Below, in pieces: positions 3,892 to 64,000 of a stretch of 64,000 nucleotides of DNA. Position 1 is the stretch's first letter; the number at the start of each line of letters is the position of its first letter. The position numbers were made by a program, and so were the translations under genes. The stretch covers positions 8,432,001-8,496,000 of the forward strand of contig NC_043000.1 in the NCBI RefSeq assembly GCF_006345805.1, given 5' to 3'. A model generated the notes under the pieces. The model saw only the letters and a list, made by a program, of their open reading frames with translations. It made no database searches and was not told the DNA's origin. This DNA comes from Octopus sinensis (taxonomy: Eukaryota).

Positions 3892-3973
3892 GTCAAAATC
3901 ATCAACAAGAAGGAGAAATACGATGCAGTACAAAGTAGGGTTGGTTCAAAGGATAACATCACTCACAGACCAG
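3892..3973 (+). CDS. tau: tau exon A (82 nt, phase 0-1), repeat VKIINKKEKYDAVQSRVGSKDNITHRP(G)
   Basis: Acceptor ttttaacttctag at 3879-3891, donor CAG|GTATGA at 3974; RVGS and HRPG motifs. Confidence 0.93.
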
Positions 3974-6900
3974 GTATGATATATATATGTACATACTTAA
4001 TGATGTATATATACATACACTTATATTATTATTATCATTATTTCATATACATGCAGCAGATTAAATTGTTGGAAAAGAAGAATTCCTAACATCAGGTTAC
4101 AACAAGTAACCTTAGATGCCAAAAACCTTCCTAAGTGTCCTAGCTGTCCCTAATAACACTATTTTCTGGAGCTGCACTAAACTAGGTTTTGTGTCTATTT
4201 TCTCTATCCATTTGTTCAAATCTTTAGGGATAGTTCCTAATGCACCTATACAGGTGCAATGTTATCATCATCATCGTTATTATTTTTAAGGTGGTAAGGT
4301 GGCAGAATCATTAGCATGCCTGGCAAAATGCTTAGCAGCATTTTGTCTGTCTTTATATTCTGAGTTCAAATTCTATCAATGTCAGTTTTGACTTCCATCC
4401 TTTCAAGGGTAATAAAACAAGTACCAGTTATGCACTGAGGTCAATGTAATTGACTTACCTCTCCCAGAAGTTCCAGGCCTTAATCATATATACTTATGCA
4501 TGTATAAAAACATGGTACAGAAATCTGATTTCTTAATTGAAATATTAAATATACAGTTCACATATAAAACTTCCTAGACATATTAAGAATAAATATGCAA
4601 ATATTAACACATAAAGAATGATGGGCTACAATTGTAGCCATGAAGCAGAGGTCGACCAGCCACGATTATAGCCCAGATTGATGCATTTAACTTATGGGCG
4701 TTTGTTAGGGTCTAATGTCACTCAAACACTCTGACACCCCACCAGAATGCAAGAGGGCTGATAGTTCAACTAATGACTTTTCAGACGATGTAAAACTTGT
4801 CACCATTATATACTAAGAAAATATTTAAACTATTTTTGTTATGTGTGTATGGTAGTCTCATTTTCATTAAATGTGCTCAGCAGTCCATGCTATGTGAGTG
4901 CAAATCCCAGCACTTTATCAGTTGACACATATAAGCACCAATCAGCAAACAACTTGTTTGCTGAAATTATAAATAAAGCCTGTGCCTTTGTGTCGGCTCA
5001 GAATTCCAGCAACTTCTGGCTGATGAGATGCAACATGTCTAAACGATAGTGTCTCAGAATGCTGTGTAGCAATGAGCCAAGTGAGTTGAATACGTTGTTG
5101 TCATAAAATGAATGAGTTATTCTTCTATGGCATACACTACAGCGACCAGCATATTTTACATCTGAACTTGCCTTCATTTATTAACAATGAATATGCAAAC
5201 ATTTATTTTAGATTTTGCTGTGCATGATGTAAATAACAATTTTTTCATAGTTGGCAGATATAATTCATTTGCTGAAAGTATAAACAAAGCCACCAGCTTG
5301 GTTTGAGCTCAAAGGTCCGGGTACTTCTAGCTGGAAAGACACAGAATGTCACATCACTAGTGTCCCAGAATCCTGTGTGGAAACAAGCCAAGTGTGTTTT
5401 GACATTCATCATAAAAGAGAGAAGTTATTCTCCTATGATGGTGACCAGCATATTTTGTGTCTGAAACCTGCTGAAATATATTAAGAATAAATGCACAAAT
5501 ATTAATCCCAGATCTCACCATACATGGTGCAAATAATGATTTTGTTTATCATCTAGCAGATATAAGCACCAATCAGCTAACAACAAAAATTATGCTTAGT
5601 GACATTTTGTTGAGCTCTTCTGAGTTCAAATCCTGCCAAGGTTATATTATCCTTTCATCCATTTGGGACTGAACAGATAAAGTTGACTGGGGTCAATGTA
5701 ACCAACTTGATCCCTCCCCTCAAAATTGATGGCCTAAAACCCTGCAATGGACTAGCATCCCATTAAAGAAGGGCTGTTGTGATCAAAATCACTTATAGGC
5801 TATAGAAATCAGGGATAAAAAAAAAAATGTATAACAAATGTTTAACAAATATTTATTTATTGTAACTTTAATTTCTTAATCTTTTGAACTACTGCTCCTC
5901 TTTAGAGCAGTTTTTCCTCCATCTCTACTTTGTGTAGAAATTTTATGGGACATTTTTAAAAAATAGAAATTGGCAACCAAAATGTTTTTCTAAATATATG
6001 TCTCTGTCATGCAAGTAGTGTCCTTCATTTCCATTTTACTGTGAAACATATCTGGCCAATGGGAAATATTGCCTTGTTTAGAAGCAAGTGAGGATTGGTG
6101 ACAGGAAAGACATCTGGCCACAGAAAATCTGCCTTAACAAAATTCCATCTGGCCCTTGGAAAAGTGGATGTTAAAATGATGATTTTTTGAAAGATGTAAA
6201 ATTAGTTAACTGATATCAAGAAATGTATTTTCTTTTTTTTTTATATTTTGTACTAATTTTATAAAATTCTTTTATATTGTGCTAACTTTATTCAATTCTT
6301 TATCATATGTATTTAAATTACAGGTGGTGGAAATATAAGAATTGAAAACAAACGATTGTCTTATCTGGAAAGTGCTAAACCAAAGGTGGGCTCCTTGGAT
6401 AAAGTTGACCATAAACCTGGTGGTGGAGATAAAAAGGTTAGCTTTACACTACATTTGCATTACAGTTTTTTTTTATTTCTTTGTATTCTCCATCAATACA
6501 GATATTTCTATTTCAGCTATTTAACTATGGCCTGTTGTCATTATGAACTGCATTAACGTTTTGGTGAAAACTAAAATTAAATTATATATTACATCAAAAC
6601 TCTAGCTTTGATTTCAGATTTAGGCAGCCGTAAACAAGCAAAAAATATTAGTTATCATTATAGATTTTTTAATTTCATTTAGAAAATGGTATTGGCACTA
6701 TGAAGTAAGGTTCTATAATTGAAAAAAAAAAAAAAAAAAAAAAAAAAGGAGCTGGTTTGTTTTCCAAAAGACAGCACTGAATTGTTGACTGTAATTCCTA
6801 TTTTACAGCAGGTAATTATTAACTAATTGTTCTGAGCATTATAATTTACTAATTAATTTGTTAATAATTTGATTTAGAAGCTGTGTCATTTAGTTGGCTC

Positions 6901-10969: not shown

Positions 10970-11619
10970 CATACATATATGTCCAATCCATGCAAGCTGG
11001 AACATAGATATTAAATGATGATGATGAGGATATGTATATAATAATAGACCCTCCCATCATTAGACGATGTATAAGGGTCTGTAATATTGTGTTTCAGCTG
11101 ATGGTTACGATTTTTTTTGTTTTTTTGTCATGAAGTCATGTTCTCATTCTTCTATTACAAAATGTGTAAGAAACAGCTGTAATTAACTGACAATTAACCA
11201 TCGTCTGTTATTGTTCATTTGTTTATAATATACCAAGAGGATTTATGACTTATTGGACACCCTAAAATATACCAACAACATACAATTCAATGTAACACTT
11301 ACTCTAGGCCAGCCGCTTAATGCTAGATACTCATAAGATTGGGTTTTCTCTGTGTACACAACCAGAATATCCTACTTTCTAACCATAGGCTGGAACCACA
11401 GGTTTATACAGCCCTATCTGGTGCATATCTTTTCAAGAACCTGATTCTATCTGAATCCTTCACCTTCCATGCTGGAATGGGTGGAACGGTTTGACAAGAG
11501 CTGGCCAGGCCTGCAACAGACTTCTGTAACTGTTTTGGCTGGATTTTTACAGCTGGATGCCCTTTCTAACACCAACCACCCTGCAGAGTGGATACACACA
11601 CACACATATATATATAAGA

Positions 11620-11658
<39 letters not shown>

Positions 11659-11886
11659 TATATATGCGTGTCAGCATCTGCACTGCTAAAAGTAGAAGTC
11701 AAAAATACTTCTGTGCCACGGAATAGTCACAAAATTAATACATGCATGATAGCAAAAAATTCCAGTGAACAATAAAATTGTCTTACCGTTGCTAGGTCAG
11801 CAAAAGTAATGCTGGTTAGTTTGATGTCACAATTTCAAATTTAGCACCAAATGGCACCTGATTCTTGTCAGCCAAACCTGCCTCCC

Positions 11887-11926
<40 letters not shown>

Positions 11927-14900
11927 AACATATTTATGGATATCATTGTTTTATTTTATTACGTTGACCAGATCTTAGATGATAAACTGGAATGGACTGT
12001 TCAACCTAAAGTGGGTTCGAAGATCAATATTACCCACAAACCTGGTGGTGGAGATAAAAAGGTAAGATTCAGTTGATTTACTCTGTTGCATCTCTTTTAT
12101 TTTGGCGCTATTCTTGATAAATAATTCCTTGCTTTCACAATACTATTAATCCTAAATTGCTTCAGTTCCGTATGTTACATATACTGAAAAAATGGAAACA
12201 TACATCTAGCGCTGCTGAGAATATGATTCAAAATTTAATAAAATATACTGAATTTATTAGAATCTTAAGGTTGTGATTGAAGTTATACAAATATAATAAT
12301 AGTAATTTTTCTTTTATCTTTTATTATTTTCTATTATTTACTTGTTTCAGTCATTATACTGTGGCTATGTTGAGACACCATCTTGAAGAGTTTGGTCAAA
12401 CAAATCAACTCTATCTTTTATTTCTAAGTCTAATTACTTATTTTATCTGTCTTTTTTGCCGAACTGTTAAGTTATGAGAATATAGTCAAACCTATAGTAG
12501 TTGTGGAGCAGTAGTGGGAAACAAACACAAAGACACACATACATATGTATGTATATACAAACACACACACACACACACAAACAAGCATTGGGCTTCTGCA
12601 CATTTTCCATGTATTAAATTCACCTACAAAGCATTGGAAGACTCACTCACCCAAAGTGCCACATAGTTGGAATGAATCTAAAACCAAGCAAGGTTGTTCA
12701 CCTCACAGCCATGTGTGTTGTTTTCTTTTCTTACTTTTAGGTACAGGCATGGCTATGTGGTAAGACGGTTGCTTCCCAACTACATGGTTCTGGGTTCATC
12801 CCACTGCTTGGCACCTTAGGCTAATATCTGCCACTATAGCTTCGGCTGACCAAAGCCTTGCGAGTGGATTTGGTAGACAGAAACTGAAAGAAGGCGGAAA
12901 CATTAGAACGCTGGGCGAAATGCTTAGTGGTATTTCATCTGTCTTTACGTTCTGAGTTCAAATTCCGCGGAGGTCGACTTTGCCTTTCATCCTTTAGGGG
13001 TCGATAAATTAAGTACCAGTTACGCACTGGGGTCGATGTAATCAACTTAATCTGTTTGTCTGTCCTTGTTTGTCCCCTCTATGTTTAGCCCCTTGTGGGC
13101 AATAAAGAAATAAGAAACTGAAAGAAGCTCATTGTATCTATTATTTGTGTGTGTTTGTCCCCTACTGCTGTTTGTTGACTAGTGCTGGTGTGTTTATGTC
13201 CCTGTAACTTAGCAGTTCAGCAAAAGAGTCTGATGGAATAAATACCAGGCTTTAAAAAAGAAATTATAAGTACTAGGGTTGATCCATTTGACTAAATATT
13301 CTTCAAGGCAATGCCCCAGCATGGTCACCACTGAATGACTGAAATGAGTAAAAGATAAAAGATTCTTTTAACTCTTTAGCATTCAGATAATTCTGTTAAA
13401 CGTAAAGCTTATTCATTCACATTATTTTTTAATTATCTTGTAGCTTGAAGACTTTGACGATGTAGTAGTTTATTTTTAGAATGACACTGTAGGGTAGATG
13501 TGAGGGGCCAATCTGGCCAGTCTGAACACAAAGCAAGTAGACTGGTCTAAATGCTAAAGAGTTAAATGAGTGGAAACGTTGAGAGCTTTTATGCCAAACA
13601 TTATATTGCTAATAATAATGATTGTTTTCTTTAACACCAGCAGCTACAAATTGGGGCTTTTCTAATATATTTTGCAGTGTTTCGCTATTAGCAGTGTGGT
13701 TTTTTTTTTTTTTTTTTTAATTTTGACTTCGACAAAAGCAACAATACTAAAAATGTATGATTGGATTAATTAATCTTTGTTTTAATTCAGGACAAAAATT
13801 CAAGATTAATTTGCTTATATAAATTCACATTTTATTCGGAAAGAAATTTGTTTGTGATTAGATATTTTTTTTCTTTTTACAATTAGTTAAATTTTAACTA
13901 ATATCTTATAAGCAAATATTTTTGTCATAAAACTTAGATTTTGCACTAATTATGTTGCCCCATAAAAATTTGTAGATAGTTTAATAAAATAACATCTTGT
14001 CTGAATTATATATTTTATTTTCTCAAATTCAAACCATTTAGTGATGCTCAGTAAACTCAAAGAAAGGAAAAAAAACCAAAAAAACAGTTATTTTTTTTTT
14101 CTTACTTGCATCTTCATAATTAGGCATATTCTGTAATTTACCTCCCTAATTCAGGTATTGGATGAGAAAGTAGAGTGGAATGTTCAGCCAAAAGTTGGCT
14201 CCAAGGATAATATTACTCACAAACCAGGTGGTGGGGATAAGAAGGTGAGTAGGTTAGAACCAGCTTGACTTTGAACTTCCATTTGTTTCTCAAGAGTCAG
14301 CATACCTTTTTTGGACTGCAAAAAATGTTCCAAATGTGTATATGTATGTAATTATGCATTTATGTATGTACATATATGTATGTGTGTGCATGTGTGTGTA
14401 ACTGCAAAAGAAAACACCTCAATCTGTCAAGAGTTACCACTAGCTTTGTAACTGCTTGTTTGATATTTCTCTGGACAATTGCTTTGGATTCAACCACAAT
14501 TGATCCGATATCATTGTAGCTTGTCTTGTTGCAAATGCATATGCAAACAGAACTAATTGTTTTGTTTTAAATGAAAAGAAAATGAAACAAACCCTACATT
14601 TTGTGAAAAGGCAAGTAGTAAGTAATCTTAAAGATATTAAAAGAGTCATTAATATTTGCTACTGGCTTCATATTCTGAGGTGAATGGAATGATTAATGAA
14701 TTCACTAAATGGTTCCTACTTACATGGAGTAATATAGTTTTTTTCTTCTATAAAATAGGAAACTAATTTTCTTTTTATTTGTGTATAAAATTCTGGCATG
14801 TGATTTTGTTTTTGATCTTGAATTAATGTTGTTTTTGTTGTGTTGGTGCAATGATAATCTTTTTTTCCTATGGTTTTCTGCATTATGCAGTTTTACTGTA

Positions 14901-17900
14901 ATTTACCTGGAGTAGAAACAGAAACTCTGGGAAACATTTTATATCAGATATACTACTGATATATACTTCTCAAATTGCACCTGGTGTTGTTTTTAACTTG
15001 TTTTCAAAGTAGGTGGACATAAAAAGTATCGATGAATTAAACACATTGAACAGATTCTGTACATATTGAAGTGCCTCCCAATGAATAATGAAGAAATCGG
15101 TGCATTGTATTACATGAACCGATTTCTTCAGAAATTTTCATTATTCAAATATCAAAACATTTTCATTTCACTTCTTGCGACATCTTCAATGAGTTAAGCA
15201 TATTCTTTAATTTACCTCCCTAACTCAGGTAATGGATGAGAAAGTAGAGTGGATTGCTCAGCCAAAAGTTGGCTCCAAGGATAATATTACTCACAAACCA
15301 GGTGGTGGGGATAAGAAGGTGAGTAGGTTAGAACCAGCTTGACTTTGAACTTCCATCTGTTTCTCAAGAGTCAGCATACCTTTTTTGGACTGCAAAAATT
15401 TCCCAAATGCATCTCTTCTGATAAATGTATTTGTATTATATATACATATTTATTTATTTATAAATATATGTAATCACAAAATAAAATACATTGATTTATC
15501 AAGTGTCAGCATGAAAGTTTTGCAACTCTGCTTATTTGATATTTCTTTGGACAGTTGCTTTGGTTCTGGCCCAATGATTTAATATCATTGTGGGTTGCAA
15601 TGGTGCAGTTGCATATACATTTAGAACAGATAAAACAAAATGGTAAAAAAAAACATGCCCTGCATTTTGAATAACAAATAAGTAATAAGTGGTCTTGAAG
15701 ACTTTTGCATTTTCGTCAGTAAATCTTCATAAGTTCAAGGAAACATTAGCATTTTCGATTGGGTTTTACATTCTGAAGTGAATCAAATTAATGAATTCAC
15801 GAAGAGTTCAAAGCCAAAATGGTACATACTTACTTGTAATGATATAAATATTTCTTCTGTAAAATGTGAAATTATTTTCTTAATATTCCTTATATTTGAT
15901 TGCAAAATATTATGTTGCATGCAATTTTGAATTAATGTTGTATTTGTTGATTGTGTTAGTGCAATGATACCTTTCTTTTTTGTGTGTGTGTGTGTCTGTG
16001 ATTTTCTGTGTAATGCAAGTTTTATTGTAATTTACCTGCATTAGTAACAGAAACTCTTGTAATCATGTCAAATATAGTATTAATGTAATCTTTGTGAATT
16101 GTACCTAGAGTGTTAGAGTGTTGTTTATTTTTTATATATATGTCATTTATTCTAGAATAGTTGGACAAAGTAAAAAAGATATGTGAAATAAAGCAATTAA
16201 CAGATTCTGTTGTGCACTGAAGTATTATCAAAGATAACACATGCACTTATTCACTATATTTTATTATTAGATTTTCAGAACATGTTCATCACCCTTTCTG
16301 TAATCTTTTCAATAATCTATGTTGCGACTAATTCCAACAACAAAGAAATCAGTGTGTGTGTTACTTTGTCAGCATTCCAATGTGCTGTGGAATCTATTCA
16401 TTGTTTACTTTGTTTCAACATACAGAGCCGTAGAAATACATCCAAATGAATGCAATATTTATATTCATGTTGCTGTTGTTTGACTATCTTTAGCTACTTT
16501 TATAGCTATAAATATGCTCCCTTTACTCTCATTTGAGTTCTAAGCCGTCAGTTAGGCAGTATTTTATATTGAAATATCCTAAAGCTGCTATATCTTGTTT
16601 GCGTTGGATTGGAAAACTGTCAGATGCCTGTTCCAGTTCTTTGTGTTCTGACAGAAATGCTTGCAACAACACTGGTGCCAAGCTGTATCAGCCCAATTTG
16701 GCAACTTTTCCCTCGGATAAACATCAAAGGTATAGAGTGGTGGGGAGGATACAGTACATACATGTACCAAGGTATGGTAACTGTTGACTGATGGTAGTCC
16801 TCTGAGTGCACTTACATTTAAGATTTCAGCACAGTCCATAGATATCAATTATTCTAGTGTTATAATTTTATATTTCATAGTTGATCTACTGTTAAGGTCT
16901 TATATCTACTTTTTGATATGTTATCATGTAAATTTTTTTTAATTTTAATTTTAGTTCTGTTGATGCTAACTTTTTTATATTTCTTATATTTAGTACCTTA
17001 TTAAAATTCATAGAATTCAAAATTTATTTTTGACAAAATCAGATATCCATTAAATCTATATTATACCAAATTTAGAAACATTTGAAGAATTACTATCATT
17101 TACTACTAAAATATATATAATTTTAGCATAATTCGGTATAATTGTCCTTGATATTTATTTTTATAATTCTTAATTGATTTTATGTTACACTGTGAATTTG
17201 GAGAAATAGTTTACATATAATTTTTACTTAACTCTTAAGGTCCTACAGTGCTTTCGCTATATAAATATCCTGTTAGAAGTTTTGATGAAATACAGCCAGC
17301 CCAATATAATAGTCATAAAAATATAACTATTGCATGAATTTGAATGGCATAGGATTATAGGATATGATGATTGTTAGTGTATATTGTAAACGTGATTTTT
17401 ACTTGTTGTCATGCCTTTTCACTTGCCCAGGTAGGATGAATATGGGTAGCTGATTAAACATAGGTGTTTTTTCACATATATTTACAAGATATTTCCTTAG
17501 TATCGATTTCCAGTCTCAGAGCTGAATTTGTGAGCCAGTTGTCTCTGTGACTTGGAAACTGCACAAATCCCTCCCTGATACCTTCATCTCTTCCATTGAT
17601 GGACCGACAGTGGTGTTGCCCTGGCGACTGGCAAAGATTGTGGTCTCATCATTCATTCTGTTAGATGTTTATTCAGGAAAAACCAAAGTTAAAGAAAATA
17701 CTTGATGTTCTAAATTCAAAGATTTTGAAGGACCAACATTACACCTGCAATGACTAATTCTGAGATCACTTACTCCTACTCAGAATCAGTAAATCCCAAT
17801 ATCACTTAGATTAATGGTGTGTAGAGATGACTCTGAAAGATCACTGATTATCTCCTCTGAATCCAAGCTTTCTTTCTCTAAATCCTTAATGAATAATAAC

Positions 17901-20569
17901 AAATAAGTCATTATTGAATAATATCACCTAATTCTAAGTCACTGACTCAGGTATTAATTGCCATAATGTTTTGTCAGACATTCACTCTGTTTACTGCAAA
18001 AAATAATAATAAATAAATAAATGTCTGTAGTGCAAACTGGAAGATTTTTAATAAGATATTTCTAAAATCTGGTGATATGTCCAAGAAGGTAACTAGAAGG
18101 GAGTACGGAGACAGGACAATTGACCGGGATGGGCACGTTTGCAAGCATGTGAAGGGAGATCAAAAGATGGAGGTAAGCATGGAGTGGAAGTAGTGAATGG
18201 TGCACAGGGCTATAAGAATTGATGGTAAACATTCATTGGGGAAGCAATAAAAATGATGAACTGATGTCAGTTGATGTAACTGAGAGGAAAGGAGAGGGTG
18301 AGTGGCAGTATAGAAATGGTTTGTGGTAACGTTCTGGTTTCATTACTTACTGCATCAGAATAATACAGAAGAAAAAAGAGTGATGCAAGGATCAAGTGCT
18401 AAAGAGATGCGGGATTGGGCTAAAGATTGCATTTGTAGGGATAAAAAAGGGGTGGGCAATGGTAAAAAAAAATTTTCTAAAATATGGGTGGGGGACTAGA
18501 AAGATACATTGCATATATGCTAGTCTTTTCTTTTAATTGCTTTGTAAACTCTATGGTTACCTATGATGCTTAATCAAAATTTATATTGTGCCTTCATGAA
18601 AATATTGCTAAAATTAGTTTGAAATTGATGTTGAAACCTACAGTATCTCTTGAACAAATGAAAAACGTATTTAAACACAGCACTTGCTGTAAGTTGGAAA
18701 GAGATCTTGTGAAAAATGTAAAGCTTTGAGAAAGATATTTAAAAATTCCATAAAATCAATGAAATTCAGAATTCAACTTAACTGTTTTCTCCTCTCACTG
18801 TCATATATGTAACTGGCAAAAATTTACACACACACACACACACATGTATATACACCAATATTTTTCTGTATATAAAAATGGCAATCATAGGTAAACAACT
18901 ATCACTTAGAGTTAAGATTCAGAATTAGAAATAAAAATTTCGATGCTGTCCGTTTATAAAATAAAGTGTATATATGTATGTGTGCATATATATATCTGTA
19001 TGTATGTATGTATGTATGTATGTTTGTATGTATACATACATACATAGATACATACATACATACATAGATACATACATACATACATACATACATAAATACA
19101 TACATACATATATACATACATACATACATGTATGTATGTGTATATATGTGTGTGTGTGTGCATACATGTATATCTATGTGTGTATTTATGTATTTATAGA
19201 TATATATTTATATTCCTAAATATATGTATGTTCATGTGTGTATCACATGATATGTGATCAACCAGATTATCAGCTGTTATACATCACTAGTCACAATGCA
19301 CTTTGCATCGTTCTAGCTTTCGAATGATGCCATCTCACTGAGTAGGCAAGCAGGCTATGTATATATATATATATTTATATATCCATGCACACATACAAAC
19401 ACTCATATCATGTATATATGTCTTACAATCTTGTTTTAGAAGTTTTTTAAACTGAATTTCCCTCTAAAACTATATACTTCAAAACGAAAATATATAAGAA
19501 ATGGAATCCCAAAACTATTAATTCCTATATGATGTTACACCTATAATTGATATGCACTCTTCTCTATCTTCTCTATTTACTAATATTGGTTCTTGCAGAA
19601 AACCTATTATTTATTTGTTCTTGCGGTGCTGTTGATGTTGTATTGCACTTCTATTGACTGTTTTTCTTTCACATCTCTAATCTTATTCTTCTTTTGGGAA
19701 ACTGGCCTTTCTACTTTCCTTCTTTTTAACATTTTTTTTTAATTAACTGTAAATTTCGTACCAATTATAATCTTATTAACTTACAGAAAACTCATAAAAG
19801 CTTAAATATTTTTGCTTTCTTCTTTTTTTTCTTCCACCTGGAATTTAATTTCATTTCATTGTCTTTTATTCCAAAATATCGTTTGATGATCTCTGAAAAT
19901 TATTAACTTTTCATTTAACTTGTTGTAAATAACATAGATTGAAGACCAGAAATTAGAATGGAAAGCTGGATCCAAAGTAGGATCTAAAGACAACCTGAAA
20001 CATGTACCTGGCGGTGGAGAAATTAAGGTAAGCAAAATTCCCTGAAATAATGGAAGAGTCTAAAAATGATTTTTTTATTAGTATTCATTTGTTTAATCAT
20101 CTTTGTTTCAGTTATGACATCAATGTTATGTGTATTGTTGTTGTTGTTGTTATTATTGTTATTATTATTGTTATTAAGGCAGCAAGCTGGCAGAATTGCT
20201 AGAACATCAGGTTAAATGTTTAGTAGCATTTTGTCTGTCTATATGTTCTGAATTCAAATTCACCCAAAGTTGACTTTGCCTTCCATCCTTTCAGGAGCAA
20301 TTAAATATGTACCAGTTTAGTACTGGTGTTGATATAATCCACAACTATCCCCTCCCACCCACCAAAAAAAAAAAAAATTCAGGCCTTGTTCTAATTGTAG
20401 AAACAATTAATTGAAGGCAGTGAGCTGGCAGAATCATCACTGCCCCACACAAATTGGTTAGCAGCACTTCTTTTGGTTCTATATTCCTAGTTCAAATTCC
20501 ACTAAGGGTCAATGTAATTGACTAATTCCCTCTCACAATATTTCAGGCCTTGTGCCTGTTATGGAAAAG

Positions 20570-20611
<42 letters not shown>

Positions 20612-20612
20612 G

Positions 20613-20650
<38 letters not shown>

Positions 20651-22841
20651 TAACATACTGGCTAAATCATTAGAACATTGCAGAAAATGCTTAGCAGTAT
20701 TTATTCTGGTCTTTTACATTCTGAGTTCAGTACACACCGATGTCAACTGTGCCTTTCATCCTTTCAAGGTTGATAAAATATTCTATATCAGTCAAGTATT
20801 GGGGGTGGGTGGGTCTGTGATAATGATTGACTAAAACTACTATTATTATCATTATTATTTTGATACTTTAGGATATCTATGTTTTGTACTAATGGTGTTT
20901 ATTTTCTTCATAGTTATAAGCTATTGCTATTTTTCATTTTTTTTTTTTTTGTTGGAGGTGGGATGGCAGATAATTTATTTACAGAGTAATTCCAGACCAT
21001 ATCAATTTTTGCTTTTTATTCAATAGCCCAAGAAAATAAAAGAATCAGACCCGCTCGAGTCGTTTAAACATACAAATTTAATTTATCTCATATTTTATTG
21101 CTACTAATTCCTGTTTTGATGTATTGCTTGTAATTCACGTTTTACAGATTTGATTTGTTATAGCTAACTAAAATTAACAAATAATCTATTTTTGAAAAGC
21201 CAAATAAATGAATTTAGTAAAATGTATTTATTCACAAAAAGAACTTCTTTCCTCACAAAGATTCCATTTAGACAGTTTCTGTTTCCTTTCCCATTTTCTT
21301 TTTAATGCTCAAGTGTCTACTGTTCTATGCTGGCATTCCTTAATAGTGCTACATTTTTATTTTAATCTATTAGAATCAATAGATTGGGCACGTTTTCTAA
21401 AATGTCTATCTTCTTTTTAAGTTTTTAACAGCACTCAATTAGATTTCTGTTCCCAATTTTATTTTGAATTGGCGGAATCTTTGTATTAGCATGAGGTGTG
21501 TGGTATCTTTATATTAATTTTTAAATAGTTTCACTTGCTGTTTATACTTCAGCTCATGGAAATGGTGTTGTTTTATATTTTGTTGTAAGTTAGATATGTC
21601 TATTTTGAAATTTTCCTCTCCTGGGTTGTGTTTATTATGGGATTTCTAATTTAGTTCATTTGATGCCTTTCTTCATTTCCCCCTTTTTTTTTTGTTTAAA
21701 TTAAATATATAGTACAATTTGCCTAATATGAAATTTCTTCCAATATTTTTTTTAATAATTTTTCCTTTATATTACTAAGAACAGTTAAGTTTATAAAATG
21801 AGTTCTGTAACTCTTTCAAGAAATTTTACTATTTTACATTAGTAATACAACACATAACTGGAGTTTACTTTGGTTTCATTAAAAGAAAGGAGAAACAAGT
21901 TGTCATTTATTGTTCTTTGTTAATCTTTGAGAATGATTTATGAATTTGTTTATTCTTCAGAATAATTTGTTATTCTTTAGAGTGACTGTAGACCCATTAG
22001 AACTGTCCCCCAACACCTATTTTGTATTTCTATTCAGTTTCATGTTTTGAAATGGAACTAGGAAAATATCCTCTTGTCTCTCAAATTATTTTATAGTTGG
22101 TTGGTAGCCACAATGAAACTATTCTGGTAGGAATTTTCTTTGAGGAATTTCATATTATTTTCATTTCAATAAATGTCCATTGTTACTTTGGTTATCTTGA
22201 CAAATCGAACATGTACTCACAAGTGAAAACTACTTAAGGATCAAATATTATTATATAATGTACTAAAACTGCTGAGTTCTATTTCCAGTGAAAATAAGTC
22301 TATTTATTTATTGATTTTTATACTGAGGAAACATCCTTTGAAGCTGTCAGTTATCTGTTAATAAAAACTGTTGGTTCTCTACAGATTCCATCGCAAAACG
22401 TTCTTGGAAAGGAAGTTGACTCAAACGTTGGTTGTATTAGTGACGAAGACCACCAAGCTGTTGGTGGTATTGCATCATCTCCTCCTCCTCCTTCTTCTTC
22501 ACTACCACAGGTAACATTGGCTTTGGTCTGGCTGCCCTCCTCCTCCATTTCAATAAAAAAAGTGAAAATTAGTGTAATGGCTATTGATTCACCTCTTAGT
22601 GAAATTAATTGCTACTCCACTTGGAACCTTTTCACAGATTATGAAAACTGACCCCGCCGATTTTAAAAAAAATCAAGGAATTTTACACTCCGTATTTATT
22701 AGCTTTTGATATGCATGGCTTCCTTTAGTTTTATATATTTGTAAACACCTGGCAAAAATACAAAGAAACACATTTGCTGTTTCTTTTTTTTTTCCAATTG
22801 ATTTACACTATTGCTTTGTTTTACACACACACATGTATATG

Positions 22842-25800: not shown

Positions 25801-27796
25801 ACAAATGTATGCTTGCCAGAGAGAAACTAAAAAACTGTGATAACTTTCATAAATCATATTTGACAAAAGCACCTTGACTACTCATTGAATATGCTGAGGA
25901 GTATGAATGTATTGTGTAAAGTCTGTGGTAAATGTTGTTTGATTACCTTAACTTGACACATTGTTTCATACAGTGGAGAGCTCGTAACTCTGAGAATTGC
26001 AGCAAATCATTCTTATAAAAGAAAAAGAAAAGAAAAAAAGAAAACAACCCTACAAGTGTGTGTTTATGCACTTGATTGACTGTATAAATGTCAAACTTGA
26101 TTGACTGTATAAATGTCAAACTTGATTCTATAAAAAATAATTTCCATATAAAATAAGACATTTTGAAAATGGAACAGTTTTATTAAGAAAGCATTTGAAC
26201 ATGTGATTGTGAGAATATGGGTAATGTAATTCTGTATATATATGGCACAAGTTTATGTACATGAGGCAATACATGTGCAACTGTATGTATAATATATGGA
26301 AGTGCATCTATATGTGTAAATGTTATAATATGTGCATGTAGCAGTATGTGTGTGTGTTTTCATAATATAATGTATACTCTGAAGAGTGTTTGCATTTATG
26401 TGTAAGTTTTTTTTTTTATTGGGTTTTAATGATTTTGCTGCTGCTATTGCCATGTTGTTCTGCTGCTGTTATTGTGTTTTATATCATAAGCCTTATACAT
26501 GTTTTCCCATGCTGGCATTAGCTTTGTATGGATTGTCATGGCCTGTGTCCTCTTGCACACACAGCTATGGAATATATCAGCTGATTTTGGTATTGTATGT
26601 CATATAGTGTAAGGGTGCATTTCATCATGCCACCTGCAATAAAGAGGTGATCCAGTGTAAGGTAGATTAAAGTTCCCTCTATATTGTTAGTGCTTGTTTG
26701 GAGTAACCACCTTTTTTTTTTAAGGCAGGTAGCCTGTGATGTGTGTCCAAGAGGGCAGCCATGTCTGTTTAAGAGAAGTCATGAACTTAGAACTCTGTGA
26801 GCAATATGACTTGTGTCTCTGTTATATGTTCCATTTTGGGGTGTATTTTCTACAGCTGGATATCCTTATCATATGCTGCTCACTGATTTTATAATATGAA
26901 TACAGAGAGTTTTTTTGCTAAATTTGACAATTTATATAAAAGGAATAGAAATCGCAGTATCCCATCCAAAAATAAAAGTATTTTAAAAATCAAAAAGTAT
27001 CAACTAGATTTGGGGGATAATAGTTTATTCAAAGCAGCCACCCTCAGCTTCCACCACCACCACCACCACCATCACCTCAACTCTGGAACTTAGTGCATGC
27101 ATTCCTCATGTATCCCTGGGAAGATCTTCAAACACCTCCTTGATCTTGGCCCCAACTTGGCCTTGGTGTTGCAGGCAGTGATTGGTGTCTTTCTCAACCG
27201 CACCTCGCTCATAATAATACATAGGATTACAACTGGGAGAATTAGGAGGCCAGAAATTAGGGCTGGTGAAGTCACAGAAATTCTCTGACAGCCATTTCTT
27301 ACTCTTTCCAGAAGTATGGCAAAAATCTTGCTGCCACACATATGGCCTTTCAGCAACAACCCTCTCCAGCCAGGATTTGACCACAGTCTCCAGTAACTTC
27401 ACATAATTGTCTGAATTGAAACTAAGGCCCTGTTCAATGATGTGGTGATAAAAATCCCAACATGCAGACATAGTCAGAACATCTGTTGTGTCTCTTCCTG
27501 CTGGCCATGGTTTCATAGTATCTGTGTAGCAGTAGTCCATGTCATGTCTCACTGCCTTTACAATGTTTCCAGGTCATGGAACAACAGTCATATTATTGTC
27601 GTTTTGATGCCCAATGTAAGCCATCATGGTACAAGTAACTCTTTTCTAATATTCAAATAGTTTCCAGTCCTAACTTTTTCTCAACTACAACTTTAATCTT
27701 TATGCTCTCCAATGCCTTTTACTCTTCACCATTACATCAAACTGTTGCTGAAAAAGGAAGGCATCACAAAATCTTCAAACCTAGCCCAAACACCCT

Positions 27797-40786: not shown

Positions 40787-40835
<49 letters not shown>

Positions 40836-40976
40836 CATTATCATTGTTATTATTATTATTATTACTATTCTCATGCATTAATTGAATGTCTCCTTGTTTT
40901 GTAGGTTGAAAGCCAGGTACTAAAATTCAAAGAAAATGCAGAACCTCGAACAAACACTGGTATTAACAAGTCGTAG
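3892..40976 (+). CDS. tau: Tau/MAP2/MAP4-family microtubule-associated protein, 3' partial multi-exon gene model (8 exons in window; 5' end upstream of the window)
   Basis: Spliced translation: VKIINKKEKYDAVQSRVGSKDNITHRPG/GGNIRIENKRLSYLESAKPKVGSLDKVDHKPGGGDKK/ILDDKLEWTVQPKVGSKINITHKPGGGDKK/VLDEKVEWNVQPKVGSKDNITHKPGGGDKK/VMDEKVEWIAQPKVGSKDNITHKPGGGDKK/IEDQKLEWKAGSKVGSKDNLKHVPGGGEIK/IPSQNVLGKEVDSNVGCISDEDHQAVGGIASSPPPPSSSLPQ/VESQVLKFKENAEPRTNTGINKS*. All introns are GT-AG with compatible phases. KxGS and PGGG are the tubulin-binding repeat signature. Probably the single invertebrate co-orthologue of MAPT/MAP2/MAP4. Confidence 0.93.
6324..6436 (+). CDS. tau: tau exon B (113 nt, phase 1-0), GGGNIRIENKRLSYLESAKPKVGSLDKVDHKPGGGDKK
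   Basis: Acceptor aaattacag at 6315-6323, donor AAG|GTTAGC at 6437; completes the PGGG split from exon A and holds a full KVGS...HKPGGG repeat. Confidence 0.95.
7977..8313. mobile_element. Spacer-less palindromic (foldback/MITE-like) element, 140-bp arms, with an extra 57-bp direct duplication in the left arm
   Basis: aattgcagcgtggaagg...ccttccacgctgcaatt; symmetry centre in CTGCAG at 8173/8174; duplicated units start 8058 and 8115. Confidence 0.85.
9921..10220. mobile_element. Foldback MITE-like element, ~130-bp imperfect arms and 37-bp spacer
   Basis: ttcttatttgaactcgtgtccattg vs caatggacacgagttcaaataagaa; cttcagcaacactttctgtc vs gacagaaagtgttgctgaag. Confidence 0.8.
11972..12061 (+). CDS. 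tau: tau exon C (90 nt, phase 0-0), ILDDKLEWTVQPKVGSKINITHKPGGGDKK
   Basis: Acceptor ttgaccag ending 11971, donor AAG|GTAAGA at 12062; KVGS/HKPGGG repeat. Confidence 0.93.
12305..12715 (-). mobile_element. Diverged family-B SINE, inverted relative to the adjacent 12740 copy
   Basis: Reverse-orientation landmarks ttttacttgtttcagtcatt, ttttgccgaactgttaagtta, cccaaagtgccaca, cacagccatg. Confidence 0.7.
12740..13362 (+). mobile_element. tRNA-derived SINE (family B) hosting the family-A insertion
   Basis: Head ggcatggctatgtggtaag...ggttctgggttca, core gcaccttaggc...gatttggtagacagaaactg, tail gactgaaatgagtaaaagataaaa. Confidence 0.82.
12893..13112 (+). mobile_element. tRNA-derived SINE (family A) nested in a family-B SINE, 14-bp TSD
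   Basis: Box-B-like ttctgagttcaaattcc; core gtcgactttgcctttcatccttt.ggggtcgataaattaagtacc; TSD agaaactgaaagaa at 12879-12892 and 13113-13126. Confidence 0.88.
13372..13561. mobile_element. piggyBac-type MITE, 190 bp
   Basis: TTAA on both sides (13368-13371, 13562-13565); TIR CTCTTTAGCATTCAGA / TCTAAATGCTAAAGAG (15/16). Confidence 0.8.
14155..14244 (+). CDS. tau: tau exon D (90 nt, phase 0-0), VLDEKVEWNVQPKVGSKDNITHKPGGGDKK
   Basis: Acceptor cctccctaattcag ending 14154, donor AAG|GTGAGT at 14245. Confidence 0.92.
15229..15318 (+). CDS. tau: tau exon E (90 nt, phase 0-0), VMDEKVEWIAQPKVGSKDNITHKPGGGDKK; tandem duplicate of exon D
   Basis: Acceptor cctccctaactcag ending 15228, donor AAG|GTGAGT at 15319; 87/90 nt identical to exon D. 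Confidence 0.9.
18965..19165. repeat. (TATG)n/(TACA)n compound microsatellite, representative of dozens of (AT)n, (CA)n and (ATT)n tracts in the window
   Basis: Direct reading; other large tracts at ~1455, 7918, 8372, 9545, 10911, 20570, 46375, 50800, 53200, 55560, 59160. Confidence 0.95.
19938..20027 (+). CDS. tau: tau exon F (90 nt, phase 0-0), IEDQKLEWKAGSKVGSKDNLKHVPGGGEIK
   Basis: Acceptor aacatag ending 19937, donor AAG|GTAAGC at 20028; KVGS...HVPGGG. Confidence 0.93.
20177..20835 (+). mobile_element. Three head-to-tail family-A SINEs separated by (ATT)n
   Basis: Repeated ggcag..agctggcagaat / ttctga(a/g)ttcaaatt / ttcatcctttc landmarks at ~20177, ~20415, ~20660. Confidence 0.75.
22385..22510 (+). 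CDS. tau: tau exon G (126 nt, phase 0-0), degenerate repeat plus Pro/Ser linker IPSQNVLGKEVDSNVGCISDEDHQAVGGIASSPPPPSSSLPQ
   Basis: Acceptor ggttctctacag ending 22384, donor CAG|GTAACA at 22511; open in frame; S-x-V-G...H...GG spacing matches the other repeats. Confidence 0.7.
27075..27797 (-). mobile_element. Degenerate Tc1/mariner transposon, probably DD37D (maT)-type
   Basis: ORF 27106-27552 contains YVWQQD..CHTS..KWL....FWPPNSPSCNPMYYY (consensus WPPNSPDxNPxDY); CAGGGTG-type terminus at 27791-27797; other end not seen. Confidence 0.85.
28870..30580 (-). mobile_element. Degenerate RTE-clade LINE, reverse transcriptase region
   Basis: Minus-strand remnants FVDFEKPYD (~29890), GLQQGCIVSP (~29715), ADDIVLLGSSEGDTQHVL...AGMKIS (~29550-29645), interrupted by stops and frameshifts; boundaries approximate. 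Confidence 0.8.
31498..31525 (+). CDS. Candidate 28-nt microexon of tau (KSLTRYEGK + G)
   Basis: Long pyrimidine tract ~31428-31470, CTAAC at 31471-31475, TGC at 31484-31486, ttttccag acceptor ending 31497, donor AAG|GTAGGC at 31526. No protein homology support. Confidence 0.35.
32595..32756. mobile_element. mariner-like MITE end; related copy at ~40165-40307
   Basis: Shared terminus actagtc...tttttgatgccac(t/c)ttg followed by TA. Confidence 0.45.
33465..34420 (+). mobile_element. RTE-clade LINE 3' fragment (RT C-terminus plus 3'UTR with GAT tail)
   Basis: + strand reads AWAKFRELL...RLYDTYVRTAMLHGNETW...GHVLHMDEDS...RPRKTWDEVVKHDL; 3'UTR ends cattaaacgatggtgatgat. Confidence 0.85.
35323..35703 (-). 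mobile_element. Non-autonomous Helitron (381 bp), different internal sequence
   Basis: a|CTAGcattatcgcccagcattgctcggg ... tttatacatataaaGA|t: same terminal structure and AT target. Confidence 0.8.
36240..36386. mobile_element. hAT (Charlie-like) MITE, 147 bp
   Basis: Perfect 14-bp TIR CAGTGGTTCCCAAC/GTTGGGAACCACTG; 8-bp TSD ttctaaat/tactaaat (7/8). Confidence 0.85.
37318..38040 (+). mobile_element. Three head-to-tail family-A SINEs separated by (ATT)n
   Basis: ttctgagttcaaatt at ~37375, ~37602, ~37892; each ends aaatttgaaacc or agaaagg followed by (ATT)n. Confidence 0.8.
38215..38446. repeat. Compound (ATT)n/(CTT)n microsatellite with an 81-bp higher-order duplication
   Basis: atcattcttcttcttcttatt...ttttatt recurs at 38268 and 38349. 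Confidence 0.9.
39245..39540 (-). mobile_element. tRNA-derived SINE of a third family; related copies at ~19250-19355 and 56126-56330(+)
   Basis: Reverse tRNA-like head gggaatcaaaaccacgatcc...cctagccactggg; shared accaggctatcagatgttgctacacatcgctagtcacaatgcac end. Confidence 0.65.
39561..39696. repeat. 136-bp near-perfect palindrome centred on (TA)13
   Basis: ttttagcctcagtttagagcattt...aattaactataagg (TA)13 ccttatagttaatt...aaatgctctaaactgaagctaaaa. Confidence 0.9.
40598..40790 (+). mobile_element. Family-A SINE just upstream of terminal exon H; further + copies at ~4290-4480, 5592-5735, 7477-7680, 9062-9180, 39795-39978, 51670-51885, 51960-52165
   Basis: Same box-B and gcctttcatcctttcg.ggtcgataaattaagtacc core. 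Confidence 0.82.
40905..40976 (+). CDS. tau: tau terminal coding exon H, R' pseudo-repeat VESQVLKFKENAEPRTNTGINKS*
   Basis: Acceptor tccttgttttgtag ending 40904; aligns to human tau IETHKLTFRENAKAKTDHG (E, L, F, ENA, T, G identical); TAG at 40974-40976. Confidence 0.9.
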   Translation, partial: VESQVLKFKENAEPRTNTGINKS

Positions 40977-57538: not shown

Positions 57539-58385
57539 CTAGCAGAATTGCCCGGCGTTGCTCGGGGCTGAATTGCTTGAAAGTACTGTTAATGATTGCA
57601 CTGAATTATGATGATTATTCAGGCAAATATTGATATAAGTTTACGCTGGGAGATAAGGACTTAACGATCAAACGTGTGCCATTGCATTGTTTTGGGGGAA
57701 CCAAATTTCTGATGAGCATTATAGGGGCACCAACTTTAAGTTTGAGAATGTGTGGTGGTAGTCCGGGGTGCTCAAAGGAATTGAGTACCTCTATTGGATA
57801 GTTGATGACGTCCTCTGGGTCAGGAGTTGTATCGATAGACTGATATACATAGACTTCCCCAGGAATGAGTTTTAGCATTTCATCATTAATATGGTGAACA
57901 GTTTTATTCCTCGGGGCCAGTATAGCCTTTTGGCCAATCCAATCTATATTCTGATAATTAGCTTGTAGATCTGGGAACACTGCATCTCTGAGATCAGAAG
58001 GCGTCTTAACAATGGTACAAATGGAATCGATGGCAATATTACCATTTTCATCCCCTGGTATTTTGCCTTCGCCAAGTGCAAGGAGGGTGTGAGGAAATGC
58101 TGCTGATGTGATATTACGTCGCATATGAGCACACATATTGGTGTGAAGTTTGAGAGTTACTTCTCTTTATTAAAAAAAATATGCATTAAAATGGAAAAAA
58201 ATGATGGTAAATTATTTTTTAAATCGTAGACTCATCGTAGACGCGCGCTAATACCCAGAAGGTCTCGATATGAATCACGACTATAAGATACCCGGTTTTG
58301 GTTAAACTGCATCGCAAAATGTGGGAGTAGTTAGGAATCTAAATCGGAGTAGACAGACACACAACCTTTCTTTTATATATAAAGA
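57539..58385 (-). mobile_element. Internally deleted Helitron (847 bp) with a PIF1-like helicase fragment
   Basis: Minus strand A|TC...CTAG|T termini; subterminal hairpin CCCGAGCAACGCCGGG (57551-57566); ORF 57615-58136 has AILAPRN..V..IN and GLPPHILKLKVGAPIMLIRNL...CNGTRL, typical of Helitron RepHel helicase. Confidence 0.92.
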
Positions 58386-63000: not shown

Positions 63001-63177
63001 ATATATATATATATATGAGATAGAGATATTGTCAATGCTGGTATCACATAAAAAGTATCCAGTCTACTCTGTAAAGTGGTTAGCATTATGAAGGGCATCC
63101 AGCTGTAATAACCATGCCAAATCAGGCAATAGAGCTTGGTACATGATGATATATATATATATATATATATATATATC

Positions 63178-64000
63178 ATCATCATCATCGTCGTTTAACG
63201 TCCGTTCTCCATGCTAGCATGGGTTGGACGGTTCGACCGGGGTTCTGGGAAGCCAGAAGGCTGCACCAGGCTCCAGTCTAATTTGGCAATGTTTCTACAG
63301 CTGGATGCCCTTCCTAACGCCAACCACTCCGTGAGTGTAGTGGGTGCTTTTTACGTGCCACCTGCACAGGTGCCAGGCGGGGCTGGCAACGGCCACGGTC
63401 AGATTGGTGTATTTTATGTGCCACCGGCACGGAAGCCAGTCGAGGCGGTGCTGGCATCGGCCACGAGTCGGATAGTGCTTTTTACGTACCACCAGACCAG
63501 GGATCCTGGCTGGTTCAATTCGATTTCGATTTCGCTTGCCCCAACATGTCTTCACAAGCAAAGGGGGTTGGCAAGGGTGCCTGTCGTACGGTCGCATTGG
63601 AGTATTTTACGTGCCACGGCCACGAGTCGGATAGTGCTTTTTACGTACCACCAGACCAGGGATCCTGGCTGGTTCAATTCGATTTCGATTTCGCTTGCCC
63701 CAACATGTCTTCACAAGCAAAGGGGGTTGGCATGGGTGCCTGTCGTACGGTCGCATTGGAGTATTTTACGTGCCACGGCCCCGAGTCGGATAGTGCTTTT
63801 TACGTACCACCAGGCCAGGGATCCTGGCTGGTTCAATTCGGTTTCGATTTCGATTTCGATTTCGATTTCGATTTCGCTTGCCCCAACATGTCTTCGCAAG
63901 CATGGGGGGTTGGGATGGGTGTCTGTCGTCGGATGAGGTTCTATATCGACTTCGCTTGCCTCAACCGGTCTTTGTGTCCAAGGGAGGAAAGGCATTCATA
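63178..64000 (-). mobile_element. Young RTE-related 3'-end element with an internal 159-bp tandem array; runs off the window
   Basis: (ATC)n tail then cgtttaacgtccgttctccatgctagcatggg, the reverse of the 54050-54240 and 61300-61520 ends; units start 63459, 63618, 63777; CpG-rich. Confidence 0.75.

What the first reader, a model, noticed from the sequence alone, without database searches (positions are those of the whole stretch)
11972..22510. Tau-family gene with an expanded, modular microtubule-binding array built from single-repeat 90-nt exons
Seen: after the 82+113-nt exon pair come four 90-nt phase-0/0 exons (C, D, E, F), each encoding exactly one 30-aa repeat, then a fifth degenerate one (G). 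That is six canonical repeats in the window, and more may lie upstream. Known: vertebrate tau/MAP2 have 3-4 repeats, MAP4, Drosophila tau and C. elegans PTL-1 up to about 5, and the human 3R/4R switch is one skippable symmetric exon (exon 10). Inference: each of C-G can be skipped in frame, so this locus could make a combinatorial 2R-7R series. The added repeats are weakly basic (net +1 to +2, counting K/R against D/E) versus +4 for exons A and B, so repeat number and affinity could be tuned separately.
Basis: partly seen in the sequence, partly recalled or inferred. Interest (0 to 1): 0.82.

Follow-up and report, generated by a model that had tools for sequence, protein, structure and literature searches.

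The report
Octopus tau-like gene, eight-repeat array
This is the microtubule-binding half of an octopus's single tau/MAP2/MAP4-type gene, really built from one-repeat exons, but long repeat arrays of this kind are already known in molluscs and fish, and only two of its exons show hints of being optional.

Summary
On the + strand there are an 82-nt and a 113-nt exon, four 90-nt exons (C-F), a 126-nt exon G and a last 72-nt exon H. All internal exons have AG/GT borders and join in frame. Pfam finds exactly six tau/MAP tubulin-binding repeats (E=1e-75). G is not a detectable repeat.

All eight exons match Octopus vulgaris chromosome OX597817.1 exactly, and the window is about 98.5% identical overall. 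Two more repeats lie upstream of the window, giving eight in the gene.

The claimed novelty does not hold:
- The same exon plan (82 + 107 + 90 + 90 nt) occurs in a land snail.
- Bivalves, other snails and a brachiopod carry 6-12 repeats.
- Zebrafish mapta has five 93-nt one-repeat exons and published 4R-6R isoforms.
- A 2022 paper already reports high repeat numbers in molluscs.

The combinatorial-splicing idea is untested. The hints concern D and E only. The annotated O. vulgaris protein skips exactly these two. The Argonauta model, and one transcript that carries four such repeats, include them. Their intron flanks are conserved between Octopus and Argonauta, while the flanks of A, B, C and H are not. 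D and E are an old tandem duplicate kept alike by gene conversion.

Verdict: a real, ordinary member of a known family. Interest is low to moderate.

The parts
3892..3973 (+). Exon A, 82 nt. It encodes a repeat up to ...HRPG and ends inside the PGGG motif. It is the counterpart of the 82-nt exon of vertebrate tau.
   Evidence: AG/GT borders. Pfam stretch. 86% identical to P0001. Exact in O. vulgaris L004. An 82-nt exon sits at the same place in Candidula, Argonauta and zebrafish mapta.
6324..6436 (+). Exon B, 113 nt. It completes the PGGG of A and encodes the next 32-aa repeat. Its donor GTTAGC is non-consensus.
   Evidence: The donor lies in a predicted hairpin, -13.8 kcal/mol, z=-2.6.
11972..12061 (+). 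Exon C, 90 nt, one 30-aa repeat (ILDDKLEW...PGGGDKK).
   Evidence: Present in the O. vulgaris protein P0236 and in Argonauta P0235. The orthologue Arg_C is 26/30 identical. Intron flanks are barely conserved: the block extends 40 nt upstream and 22 nt downstream.
14155..14244 (+). Exon D, 90 nt, one 30-aa repeat (VLDEKVEWNVQ...). It is the first copy of a tandem duplicate.
   Evidence: Exact in the O. vulgaris genome but absent from its annotated protein. Present in the Argonauta model.
15229..15318 (+). Exon E, 90 nt, one 30-aa repeat (VMDEKVEWIAQ...). It is the second copy and is 87/90 nt identical to D. All three differences change an amino acid.
14120..14324 (+). Homogenised core of duplication unit 1: exon D plus about 35 nt of upstream and about 80 nt of downstream intron. 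It is 97% identical to 15194-15398. The rest of the roughly 1074-nt unit is only 50-75% identical, with indels.
   Evidence: The same flanks are conserved in Argonauta D and E.
15194..15398 (+). Homogenised core of duplication unit 2: exon E plus conserved intron flanks.
   Evidence: A downstream motif specific to E is shared by Octopus E and Argonauta E, so the duplication predates their split.
19938..20027 (+). Exon F, 90 nt, one 30-aa repeat (IEDQKLEWKAGSK...PGGGEIK). It belongs to a distinct, older repeat type. Its acceptor has a weak pyrimidine tract (11/22).
   Evidence: It groups with the F repeats of Argonauta, L001 and L002.
22385..22510 (+). Exon G, 126 nt. It is acidic and Pro/Ser-rich (net -4) and is not a detectable repeat.
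   Evidence: Counterparts exist in P0001, L002, Argonauta (114 nt) and Candidula.
40905..40976 (+). Last coding exon H: 23 codons plus TAG (VESQVLKFKENAEPRTNTGINKS*).
   Evidence: Identical to the C-terminus of P0236. The tail motif is shared with the Dreissena and Haliotis proteins.

Best explanation
The window holds the 3' half of the single tau/MAP2/MAP4-family gene of an octopus of the Octopus vulgaris complex, either another individual or the sister species O. sinensis.

It encodes the C-terminal microtubule-binding region. An 82-nt and a 113-nt exon are shared with vertebrate tau. They are followed by four 90-nt exons that each add one 30-aa repeat, then an acidic linker exon and a short tail exon. 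With the two repeats encoded upstream of the window, the full protein has eight PGGG-type repeats.

The one-repeat exons arose by exon duplication. The plan of 82 + about 110 + 90 + 90 nt predates cephalopods. Cephalopods then copied one repeat type again: C, D and E in octopods, X and Y in the other lineage sampled. D and E are an old tandem duplicate, older than the Octopus/Argonauta split, whose exons and near flanks are kept alike by gene conversion.

Inferred from the family, not shown here: each repeat binds along a protofilament, as in tau-microtubule structures, so the number of repeats sets footprint and affinity.

Inferred from indirect evidence: D and E, rather than all of C to G, are the likely optional exons, which would give 6-, 7- and 8-repeat proteins.
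For: Family and anatomy:
- Pfam PF00418 matches six stretches, E=1e-75.
- The best solved relatives are tau chains, led by a microtubule-associated protein tau chain of entry 6CVN, E=7e-32.

Identity of the gene:
- All eight exons are exact in O. vulgaris OX597817.1, and the window is 98.3-98.7% identical with indels.
- The O. vulgaris protein CAI9722284.1 (A0AA36F2P5) is 100% identical over A, B, C, F, G and H.
- A profile scan of the O. vulgaris locus gives eight repeat segments in the whole gene, counting R0 only weakly (E=0.34).

Age of the architecture:
- Candidula has 82+107+90+90 nt.
- Argonauta has 82+113+4x90 nt.
- Zebrafish mapta has an 82+107 pair and five 93-nt exons.

Duplication and conversion:
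- document the unit, its homogenised core and the repeat types.

Use in mRNA:
- Spliced transcripts L001 and L002 from two other cephalopod-like species carry 3 and 4 post-B repeats joined exactly at the predicted borders.

Optional D and E:
- The O. vulgaris model skips exactly D and E. That annotation drew on Iso-Seq, RNA-seq, protein alignments and ab initio models (PMC10700109).
- The conserved block extends 140-177 nt upstream and 89-316 nt downstream of D and E. For A, B and H it extends 5-42 nt.
- As a precedent, Mercenaria isoforms X3 and X10 differ by exactly three 30-aa repeats.
Against: No reads from this species could be examined, so inclusion or skipping of any exon is unproven.

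The O. vulgaris model may be an annotation artefact. It comes from a consensus of mixed evidence, and near-identical tandem exons are hard to align.

The Argonauta model and L002 include the full set, which would fit constitutive use.

Conserved flanks are also seen, more weakly, at F and G, so the signal is not unique to D and E. Part of it could come from gene conversion combined with a slow local rate.

The species is assigned only by about 98.5% identity.
Confidence: 0.85

Rival explanations
1. Every one of C to G is an independently skippable cassette, and the locus produces a combinatorial 2R-7R series that tunes repeat number and affinity separately.
For: C to F are 90 nt and G is 126 nt, so all are multiples of three in phase 0. 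The charge difference between A/B and C-F is real. F has a weak acceptor tract. Repeat-number isoforms exist in zebrafish (PMC4236441) and are annotated in a clam.
Against: No isoform lacking C, F or G was seen in any of the models or transcripts examined. C has no conserved intron flanks. The gene holds eight repeats, not seven, and R0, R1, A and B give a floor of four. G is not a repeat.
Confidence: 0.1
2. All exons are constitutive. The octopus makes one eight-repeat protein, apart from N-terminal variants, and the O. vulgaris model without D and E is an annotation error.
For: The Argonauta model includes C, D, E and F. L002 includes four post-B repeats. D and E have strong donors (AAG|GTGAGT) and fair acceptor tracts. 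The O. vulgaris annotation merges protein alignments and ab initio calls. The O. bimaculoides proteins available to it were fragments (PMC8985376).
Against: A typical alignment artefact would drop one of two near-identical exons, not both. About 30 nt of upstream and 90 nt of downstream intron are conserved across species around D and E only at this strength. Constitutive exons A, B and H lack this.
Confidence: 0.4
3. D and E are an assembly artefact, such as an uncollapsed haplotype, or they are dead pseudo-exons.
For: The two copies are 97% identical over 205 nt.
Against: The remainder of the 1.07-kb units is only 50-75% identical, with many indels. Both copies are present and exact in an independent O. 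vulgaris assembly and in Argonauta, where an E-specific flank is shared. Frames and splice sites are intact in both species, and the Argonauta model uses them.
Confidence: 0.02

Closest known systems
Human MAPT exon 10, the 3R/4R switch
   Same: A symmetric exon that encodes exactly one repeat. Skipping it changes repeat number in frame. The neighbouring 82-nt and roughly 113-nt exons have the same split inside PGGG. The human exon sizes are from my own knowledge; the split was checked here only in zebrafish.
   Different: The octopus one-repeat exons are 90 nt, not 93. They lie after the 113-nt exon, not before the 82-nt exon. There are four of them. Alternative use is unproven.
Zebrafish mapta (4R-6R isoforms; P0123)
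   Same: A tau gene with a run of single-repeat exons. Five 93-nt exons were read here, Pfam finds 8 repeats, and repeat-number isoforms by splicing are published (PMC4236441).
   Different: The added exons are copies of the second-repeat type and sit upstream of the 82-nt exon. This is an independent expansion in a vertebrate paralogue.
Molluscan tau-like proteins (Crassostrea gigas K1QDY2 with 10 repeats; Mercenaria isoforms X3/X10; Nucella; Haliotis; Candidula)
   Same: The same single invertebrate family member with 5-10 repeats (PMC8985376). Candidula has the same 82+107+90+90 exon plan. The Mercenaria isoforms differ by exactly three 30-aa repeats.
   Different: Which repeat types were copied differs by lineage. 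Bivalves copy B-like 32-aa repeats, and Nucella has four identical terminal repeats. Octopods copied the C/D/E type.
Octopus bimaculoides LOC106878541, as discussed in PMC8985376
   Same: Probably the orthologous gene. That paper lists three UniProt fragments with 1+3+3 = 7 repeats and maps them to one gene.
   Different: The fragments were never joined, and the exon structure and the D/E duplicate were not described. I could not retrieve these sequences, so orthology is inferred.
Argonauta hians MAP4-like protein GAB1598187.1 (P0235)
   Same: The orthologue, with the same A-B-C-D-E-F-G-H exon series.
   Different: G is 114 nt and the B-C intron is only about 380 nt. The G-H intron carries five extra 96-nt repeat-coding, exon-like units that are absent from Octopus.

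Membership tests
Tau/MAP2/MAP4 family of microtubule-associated proteins | Tandem 30-32-aa tubulin-binding repeats ending in PGGG (Pfam PF00418) | tested here: met
   Six stretches, 249.6 bits against a cut-off of 27, E=1.1e-75. Six segments and no others in six-frame scans.
Tau/MAP2/MAP4 family of microtubule-associated proteins | Repeats lie at the C-terminal end, preceded by a basic Pro/Ser-rich region and a long N-terminal projection domain | tested here: met
   The stop codon falls 65 codons after the last repeat. O. vulgaris protein P0236 has about 560 residues before exon A, including Ser/Pro/Lys-rich stretches. This part lies outside the window.
Tau/MAP2/MAP4 family of microtubule-associated proteins | Conserved exon plan: an 82-nt exon ending inside PGGG, followed by a 107-113-nt exon | tested here: met
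   Window 82+113. Zebrafish mapta 82+107. Candidula 82+107. Argonauta 82+113.
Tau/MAP2/MAP4 family of microtubule-associated proteins | The closest characterised and solved relatives are tau or MAP proteins | tested here: met
   The named hits among those listed are almost all tau, MAP4 or MAP2 proteins. All 49 PDB matches are tau, and the top one is a microtubule-associated protein tau chain, 6CVN_D.
Tau/MAP2/MAP4 family of microtubule-associated proteins | Binds and stabilises microtubules | not testable with these tools
   This needs co-sedimentation or imaging with recombinant protein.
Repeat-number switch by cassette exon (MAPT exon 10 type) | A symmetric exon encoding exactly one repeat | tested here: met
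   C, D, E and F are each 90 nt, phase 0/0, one repeat each.
Repeat-number switch by cassette exon (MAPT exon 10 type) | mRNAs with and without the exon in the same species | tested here: inconclusive
   The O. vulgaris model lacks D and E although both are intact in its genome. Argonauta and L002 include the full set. No reads or second isoform of the same species were available.
Repeat-number switch by cassette exon (MAPT exon 10 type) | Conserved intronic flanks or a regulatory structure at the splice sites | tested here: inconclusive
   D and E flanks are conserved between Octopus and Argonauta and between the paralogues. The flanks of A, B, C and H are not, and those of F and G are conserved more weakly. 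A donor-sequestering hairpin is predicted, with z from -1.4 to -2.9 and no covariation. Exon B shows a similar hairpin.

The most novel reading that the evidence does not exclude
D and E may be a conserved pair of regulated cassette exons. They are flanked by intronic elements kept since before the Octopus/Argonauta split, and their donor sites are masked by pairing with exon sequence. Octopus neurons could then switch between 6-, 7- and 8-repeat tau-like proteins. That would be a repeat-number switch that arose independently of the vertebrate exon 10 switch, at a different place in the array.
Probability: 0.3. Interest if true: 0.5.

Novelty: already known. Interest (0 to 1): 0.25.

Why it matters
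The result has little general significance. It confirms that the tau-family exon plan is very old, shared from mollusc to fish. It also shows that repeat number in this family changes easily by exon duplication, which has already been reported for molluscs and fish.

Three modest practical points remain:
- The public O. vulgaris protein is misnamed 'titin-like' and lacks two intact exons.
- The octopod gene has eight repeats.
- D and E are concrete, cheaply testable candidates for a repeat-number splice switch in a large-brained invertebrate.

Tried and rejected
1. The first two protein searches found no octopus protein. The tool appears to keep only targets about 0.57 to 1.75 times the query length. 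Doubling the query brought in the 752-aa O. vulgaris and 793-aa Argonauta proteins.
2. Looking up the SRA runs of the two transcripts in the literature gave nothing, so their species remain unknown.
3. The genomic loci of Dreissena P0003 and Mya P0134 are not on record. Bivalve exon structure was therefore not checked.
4. A search for a paper stating the human exon sizes of 82 and 113 bp found nothing. Zebrafish mapta was read instead.
5. The extra exon of L002 and the Argonauta 96-nt units have no counterpart in the window.
6. Exon G as a repeat was rejected by Pfam and by my own profile.
7. An RNA structure spanning D with its flanks gave an overall fold of z=-0.5 and almost no covariation. 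Only the local donor hairpin stands out, and exon B has one too.
8. Mutually exclusive use of D and E was considered and set aside. Both are multiples of three, L002 carries two such copies together, and the products would differ by only 1-3 residues.
9. Structure prediction was not run, because these repeats are intrinsically disordered.
10. No tRNA genes were found in the window.
Full report
**What is in the sequence**

The + strand between 3.9 and 41 kb carries eight short exons with canonical AG/GT borders:
- A, 3892-3973 (82 nt)
- B, 6324-6436 (113 nt)
- C, 11972-12061 (90 nt)
- D, 14155-14244 (90 nt)
- E, 15229-15318 (90 nt)
- F, 19938-20027 (90 nt)
- G, 22385-22510 (126 nt)
- H, 40905-40976 (23 codons plus TAG)

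A to G join in frame into 227 codons. Pfam finds six stretches of PF00418, the tau/MAP tubulin-binding repeat, with E=1.1e-75. A profile built from the repeats and run over all six frames of the window finds these six segments and nothing else; the next hit has E=0.3.

Two details are not correct. G is 126 nt, acidic and Pro/Ser-rich, and is not a detectable repeat.

**Which gene and which organism**

Two protein searches returned only distant relatives and two cephalopod-like transcripts. The search tool seems to keep only targets of similar length to the query. A doubled query then retrieved 'titin-like [Octopus vulgaris]' (CAI9722284.1, UniProt A0AA36F2P5, 752 aa) and 'microtubule-associated protein 4-like [Argonauta hians]' (GAB1598187.1, 793 aa).

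The O. vulgaris protein is identical to the window over A, B, C, F, G and H. The O. vulgaris locus (OX597817.1:175146395-175225489, L004) contains all eight exons exactly. It aligns to the window at 98.3-98.7% identity with many small indels, and window position 1 corresponds to L004 position 36524. O. vulgaris and O. sinensis diverged about 2.5 million years ago (PMC10700109). The window therefore comes from another O. vulgaris individual or from O. sinensis.

Upstream of the window the gene has a 449-codon first exon, a small exon, and two exons that encode a weak repeat R0 and a clear repeat R1. The whole gene therefore holds eight PGGG-type repeats. The annotated model without D and E scores six Pfam stretches.

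**Evidence that the exons are used**

Two spliced contigs assembled from public RNA runs, L001 (SRR9970008) and L002 (SRR27666069), come from two other species. They are about 80% identical at the nucleotide level to each other and to the window.
- L001 encodes R0, R1, A and B, then three 30-aa repeats, then G and H.
- L002 contains a one-base frameshift. It encodes four 30-aa repeats, then G, an extra degenerate 29-aa exon, and H.

The joins fall exactly where the window's exon borders predict. The Argonauta locus (L005) has the same series: 82, 113, 90, 90, 90, 90 and 114 nt, then the last exon.

**Is the array an unusual expansion?**

It is not. The land snail Candidula unifasciata has 82 + 107 + 90 + 90 nt exons followed by a G-like exon. 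One-repeat 90-nt exons after the 82/113 pair are therefore older than cephalopods.

Pfam stretch counts in other proteins:

| Species or protein | Stretches |
|---|---|
| Dreissena, Mya | 6 |
| Mactra | 5 |
| Mercenaria X10 / X3 | 6 / 9 |
| Haliotis, Gigantopelta | 6 |
| Nucella | 10 |
| Lingula | 12 |
| Zebrafish mapta | 8 |
| Unnamed transcript-derived protein P0129 | 11 |
| Elephant tau | 4 |

My own repeat profile, which counts differently, gave 7 segments for a sea star protein and 9 for Ciona.

A 2022 study states that molluscs have the highest repeat numbers, some with 7-10 and an oyster protein with 10. It lists three O. bimaculoides fragments with 1+3+3 repeats that belong to one gene, LOC106878541 (PMC8985376). 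Seven repeats in an Antarctic fish tau were noted in 2016 (PMC4815063). Zebrafish mapta gives 4R-6R isoforms by splicing (PMC4236441). I read its locus and found five 93-nt one-repeat exons followed by an 82-nt and a 107-nt exon. Two RefSeq isoforms of the clam Mercenaria differ by an in-frame block of exactly three 30-aa repeats.

**What is specific to cephalopods**

Comparing the 30-aa repeats shows three groups:
- An F type, shared by all four cephalopod sequences.
- A Y type, present as C, D and E in Octopus and Argonauta, and as one or two copies in L001 and L002.
- An X type, found only in L001 and L002.

Repeat copies have therefore turned over within cephalopods.

**The D/E pair**

D and E lie in a tandem duplication of about 1074 nt. 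The exon, about 35 nt upstream and about 80 nt downstream are 97-99% identical. The rest of the unit is 50-75% identical, with many gaps. This rules out an assembly artefact.

Within each species D and E share substitutions that the other species lacks, which is concerted evolution. Octopus E and Argonauta E nevertheless share an E-specific stretch of downstream intron, so the duplication predates their split. The three D/E differences in Octopus all change amino acids, and no synonymous site differs. This fits recent gene conversion.

**Splicing**

In-frame skipping is arithmetically possible for C, D, E, F and G. A and B must go together, since 82+113 = 195. Direct evidence could not be obtained, because no reads or transcripts of this species are reachable with the tools. 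Indirect evidence points to D and E only.
1. The O. vulgaris model joins C directly to F although D and E are intact in that genome. That annotation used Iso-Seq and RNA-seq, but also protein alignments and ab initio models, so this evidence is weak.
2. Between Octopus and Argonauta, the alignable block extends well beyond some exons but not others. The flanks of D and E within 50 nt are 73-82% identical, against about 50-65% for A, B, C, F and H.

| Exon | Block beyond exon, upstream / downstream (nt) |
|---|---|
| D | 177 / 89 |
| E | 140 / 316 |
| A | 9 / 5 |
| B | 16 / 14 |
| C | 40 / 22 |
| H | 7 / 42 |
| F (lower identity) | 115 / 81 |
| G (lower identity) | 130 / 279 |

3. The D and E donor (GUGAGUAGGUUA) is predicted to pair with exon bases 25-37 nt upstream (UAAUAUUACUCAC). 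The energy is -10.4 kcal/mol with z=-1.9 in Octopus, and -15.8 and -14.1 kcal/mol with z=-2.9 and -1.4 in Argonauta. There is no covariation, and exon B shows a similar hairpin (z=-2.6). This is only a lead.

Against optional use, the Argonauta model and L002 contain the full set.

**Mechanism**

Shown here: the family, the exon plan, the repeat count, the duplication history and use in mRNA of relatives.

Inferred from the family: the repeats bind along microtubule protofilaments. The top solved match is a microtubule-associated protein tau chain of entry 6CVN. That this entry shows tau on the microtubule is from my own knowledge. More repeats would then lengthen the footprint.

Inferred from indirect evidence: D and E are optional.

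**Verdict**

The gene is already annotated in public octopod genomes, and large repeat numbers in molluscs are published, so I rate it already known, with low to moderate interest. The useful residue is a correction to the O. vulgaris model and a simple testable prediction about D and E.

Noticed in passing
L005:51605-58184 (Argonauta hians; intron between exons G and H): There are five tandem copies, with a period of about 1.6 kb, of a 96-nt exon-like unit with AG/GT borders. Each encodes a 32-aa repeat (IEDHKLEFTEKAQPKVGSKKNLIHQPGGGNVQ). They are not in the annotated protein. Transcript L002 has one degenerate exon at the same place. There is no counterpart in the window or in O. vulgaris.
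   Followed up: partly
window 14205-14258 and 15279-15332; also 6397-6450: The donor sites of D and E are predicted to be sequestered by pairing with exon bases, in a 12-bp helix that is conserved and stronger in Argonauta. Exon B, which has a non-consensus GTTAGC donor, also sits in a hairpin (z=-2.6). No covariation is available.
   Followed up: partly
L004 (O. vulgaris OX597817.1), protein CAI9722284.1: The public O. vulgaris protein for this gene is named 'titin-like'. It omits exons D and E, which are intact in that assembly.
   Followed up: yes
window 12944-13011, 20240-20307, 20713-20780: Three copies, 75-76% identical, of a short dispersed repeat lie in the introns. By eye they look like SINE copies, but ARAGORN calls no tRNA gene there.
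   Followed up: no
window 57615-58136 (- strand): An ORF of 173 aa carries a Pif1 helicase 2B domain (PF21530, E=2e-15). It is probably a fragment of a Helitron-like or Pif1-like element downstream of the gene.
   Followed up: partly
window 27106-27552 (- strand): An ORF of 148 aa in the G-H intron looks to me like the C-terminal part of a mariner/Tc1-type transposase. Pfam gave no match.
   Followed up: partly
window 63458-63852: A tandem repeat of 159 nt is present in 2.5 copies at 98% identity, in the GC-richer end of the window. A related 323-nt stretch (63175-63497) also occurs in the first intron of the gene in O. vulgaris at 92.6% identity.
   Followed up: no
window 11600-11670, 11890-11920, 18950-19230, 20560-20650, 40790-40870 and elsewhere: The introns contain very many microsatellites of the (TA)n, (CA)n, (ATT)n and (GTAT)n kinds. 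Overall G+C is about 30%.
   Followed up: no
The search for homologous proteins (tool behaviour): Listed targets were always between about 0.57 and 1.75 times the query length: 155-398 aa for a 227-aa query, 252-699 aa for 399 aa, and 456-1310 aa for 798 aa. Long orthologues are therefore missed with a short query.
   Followed up: yes
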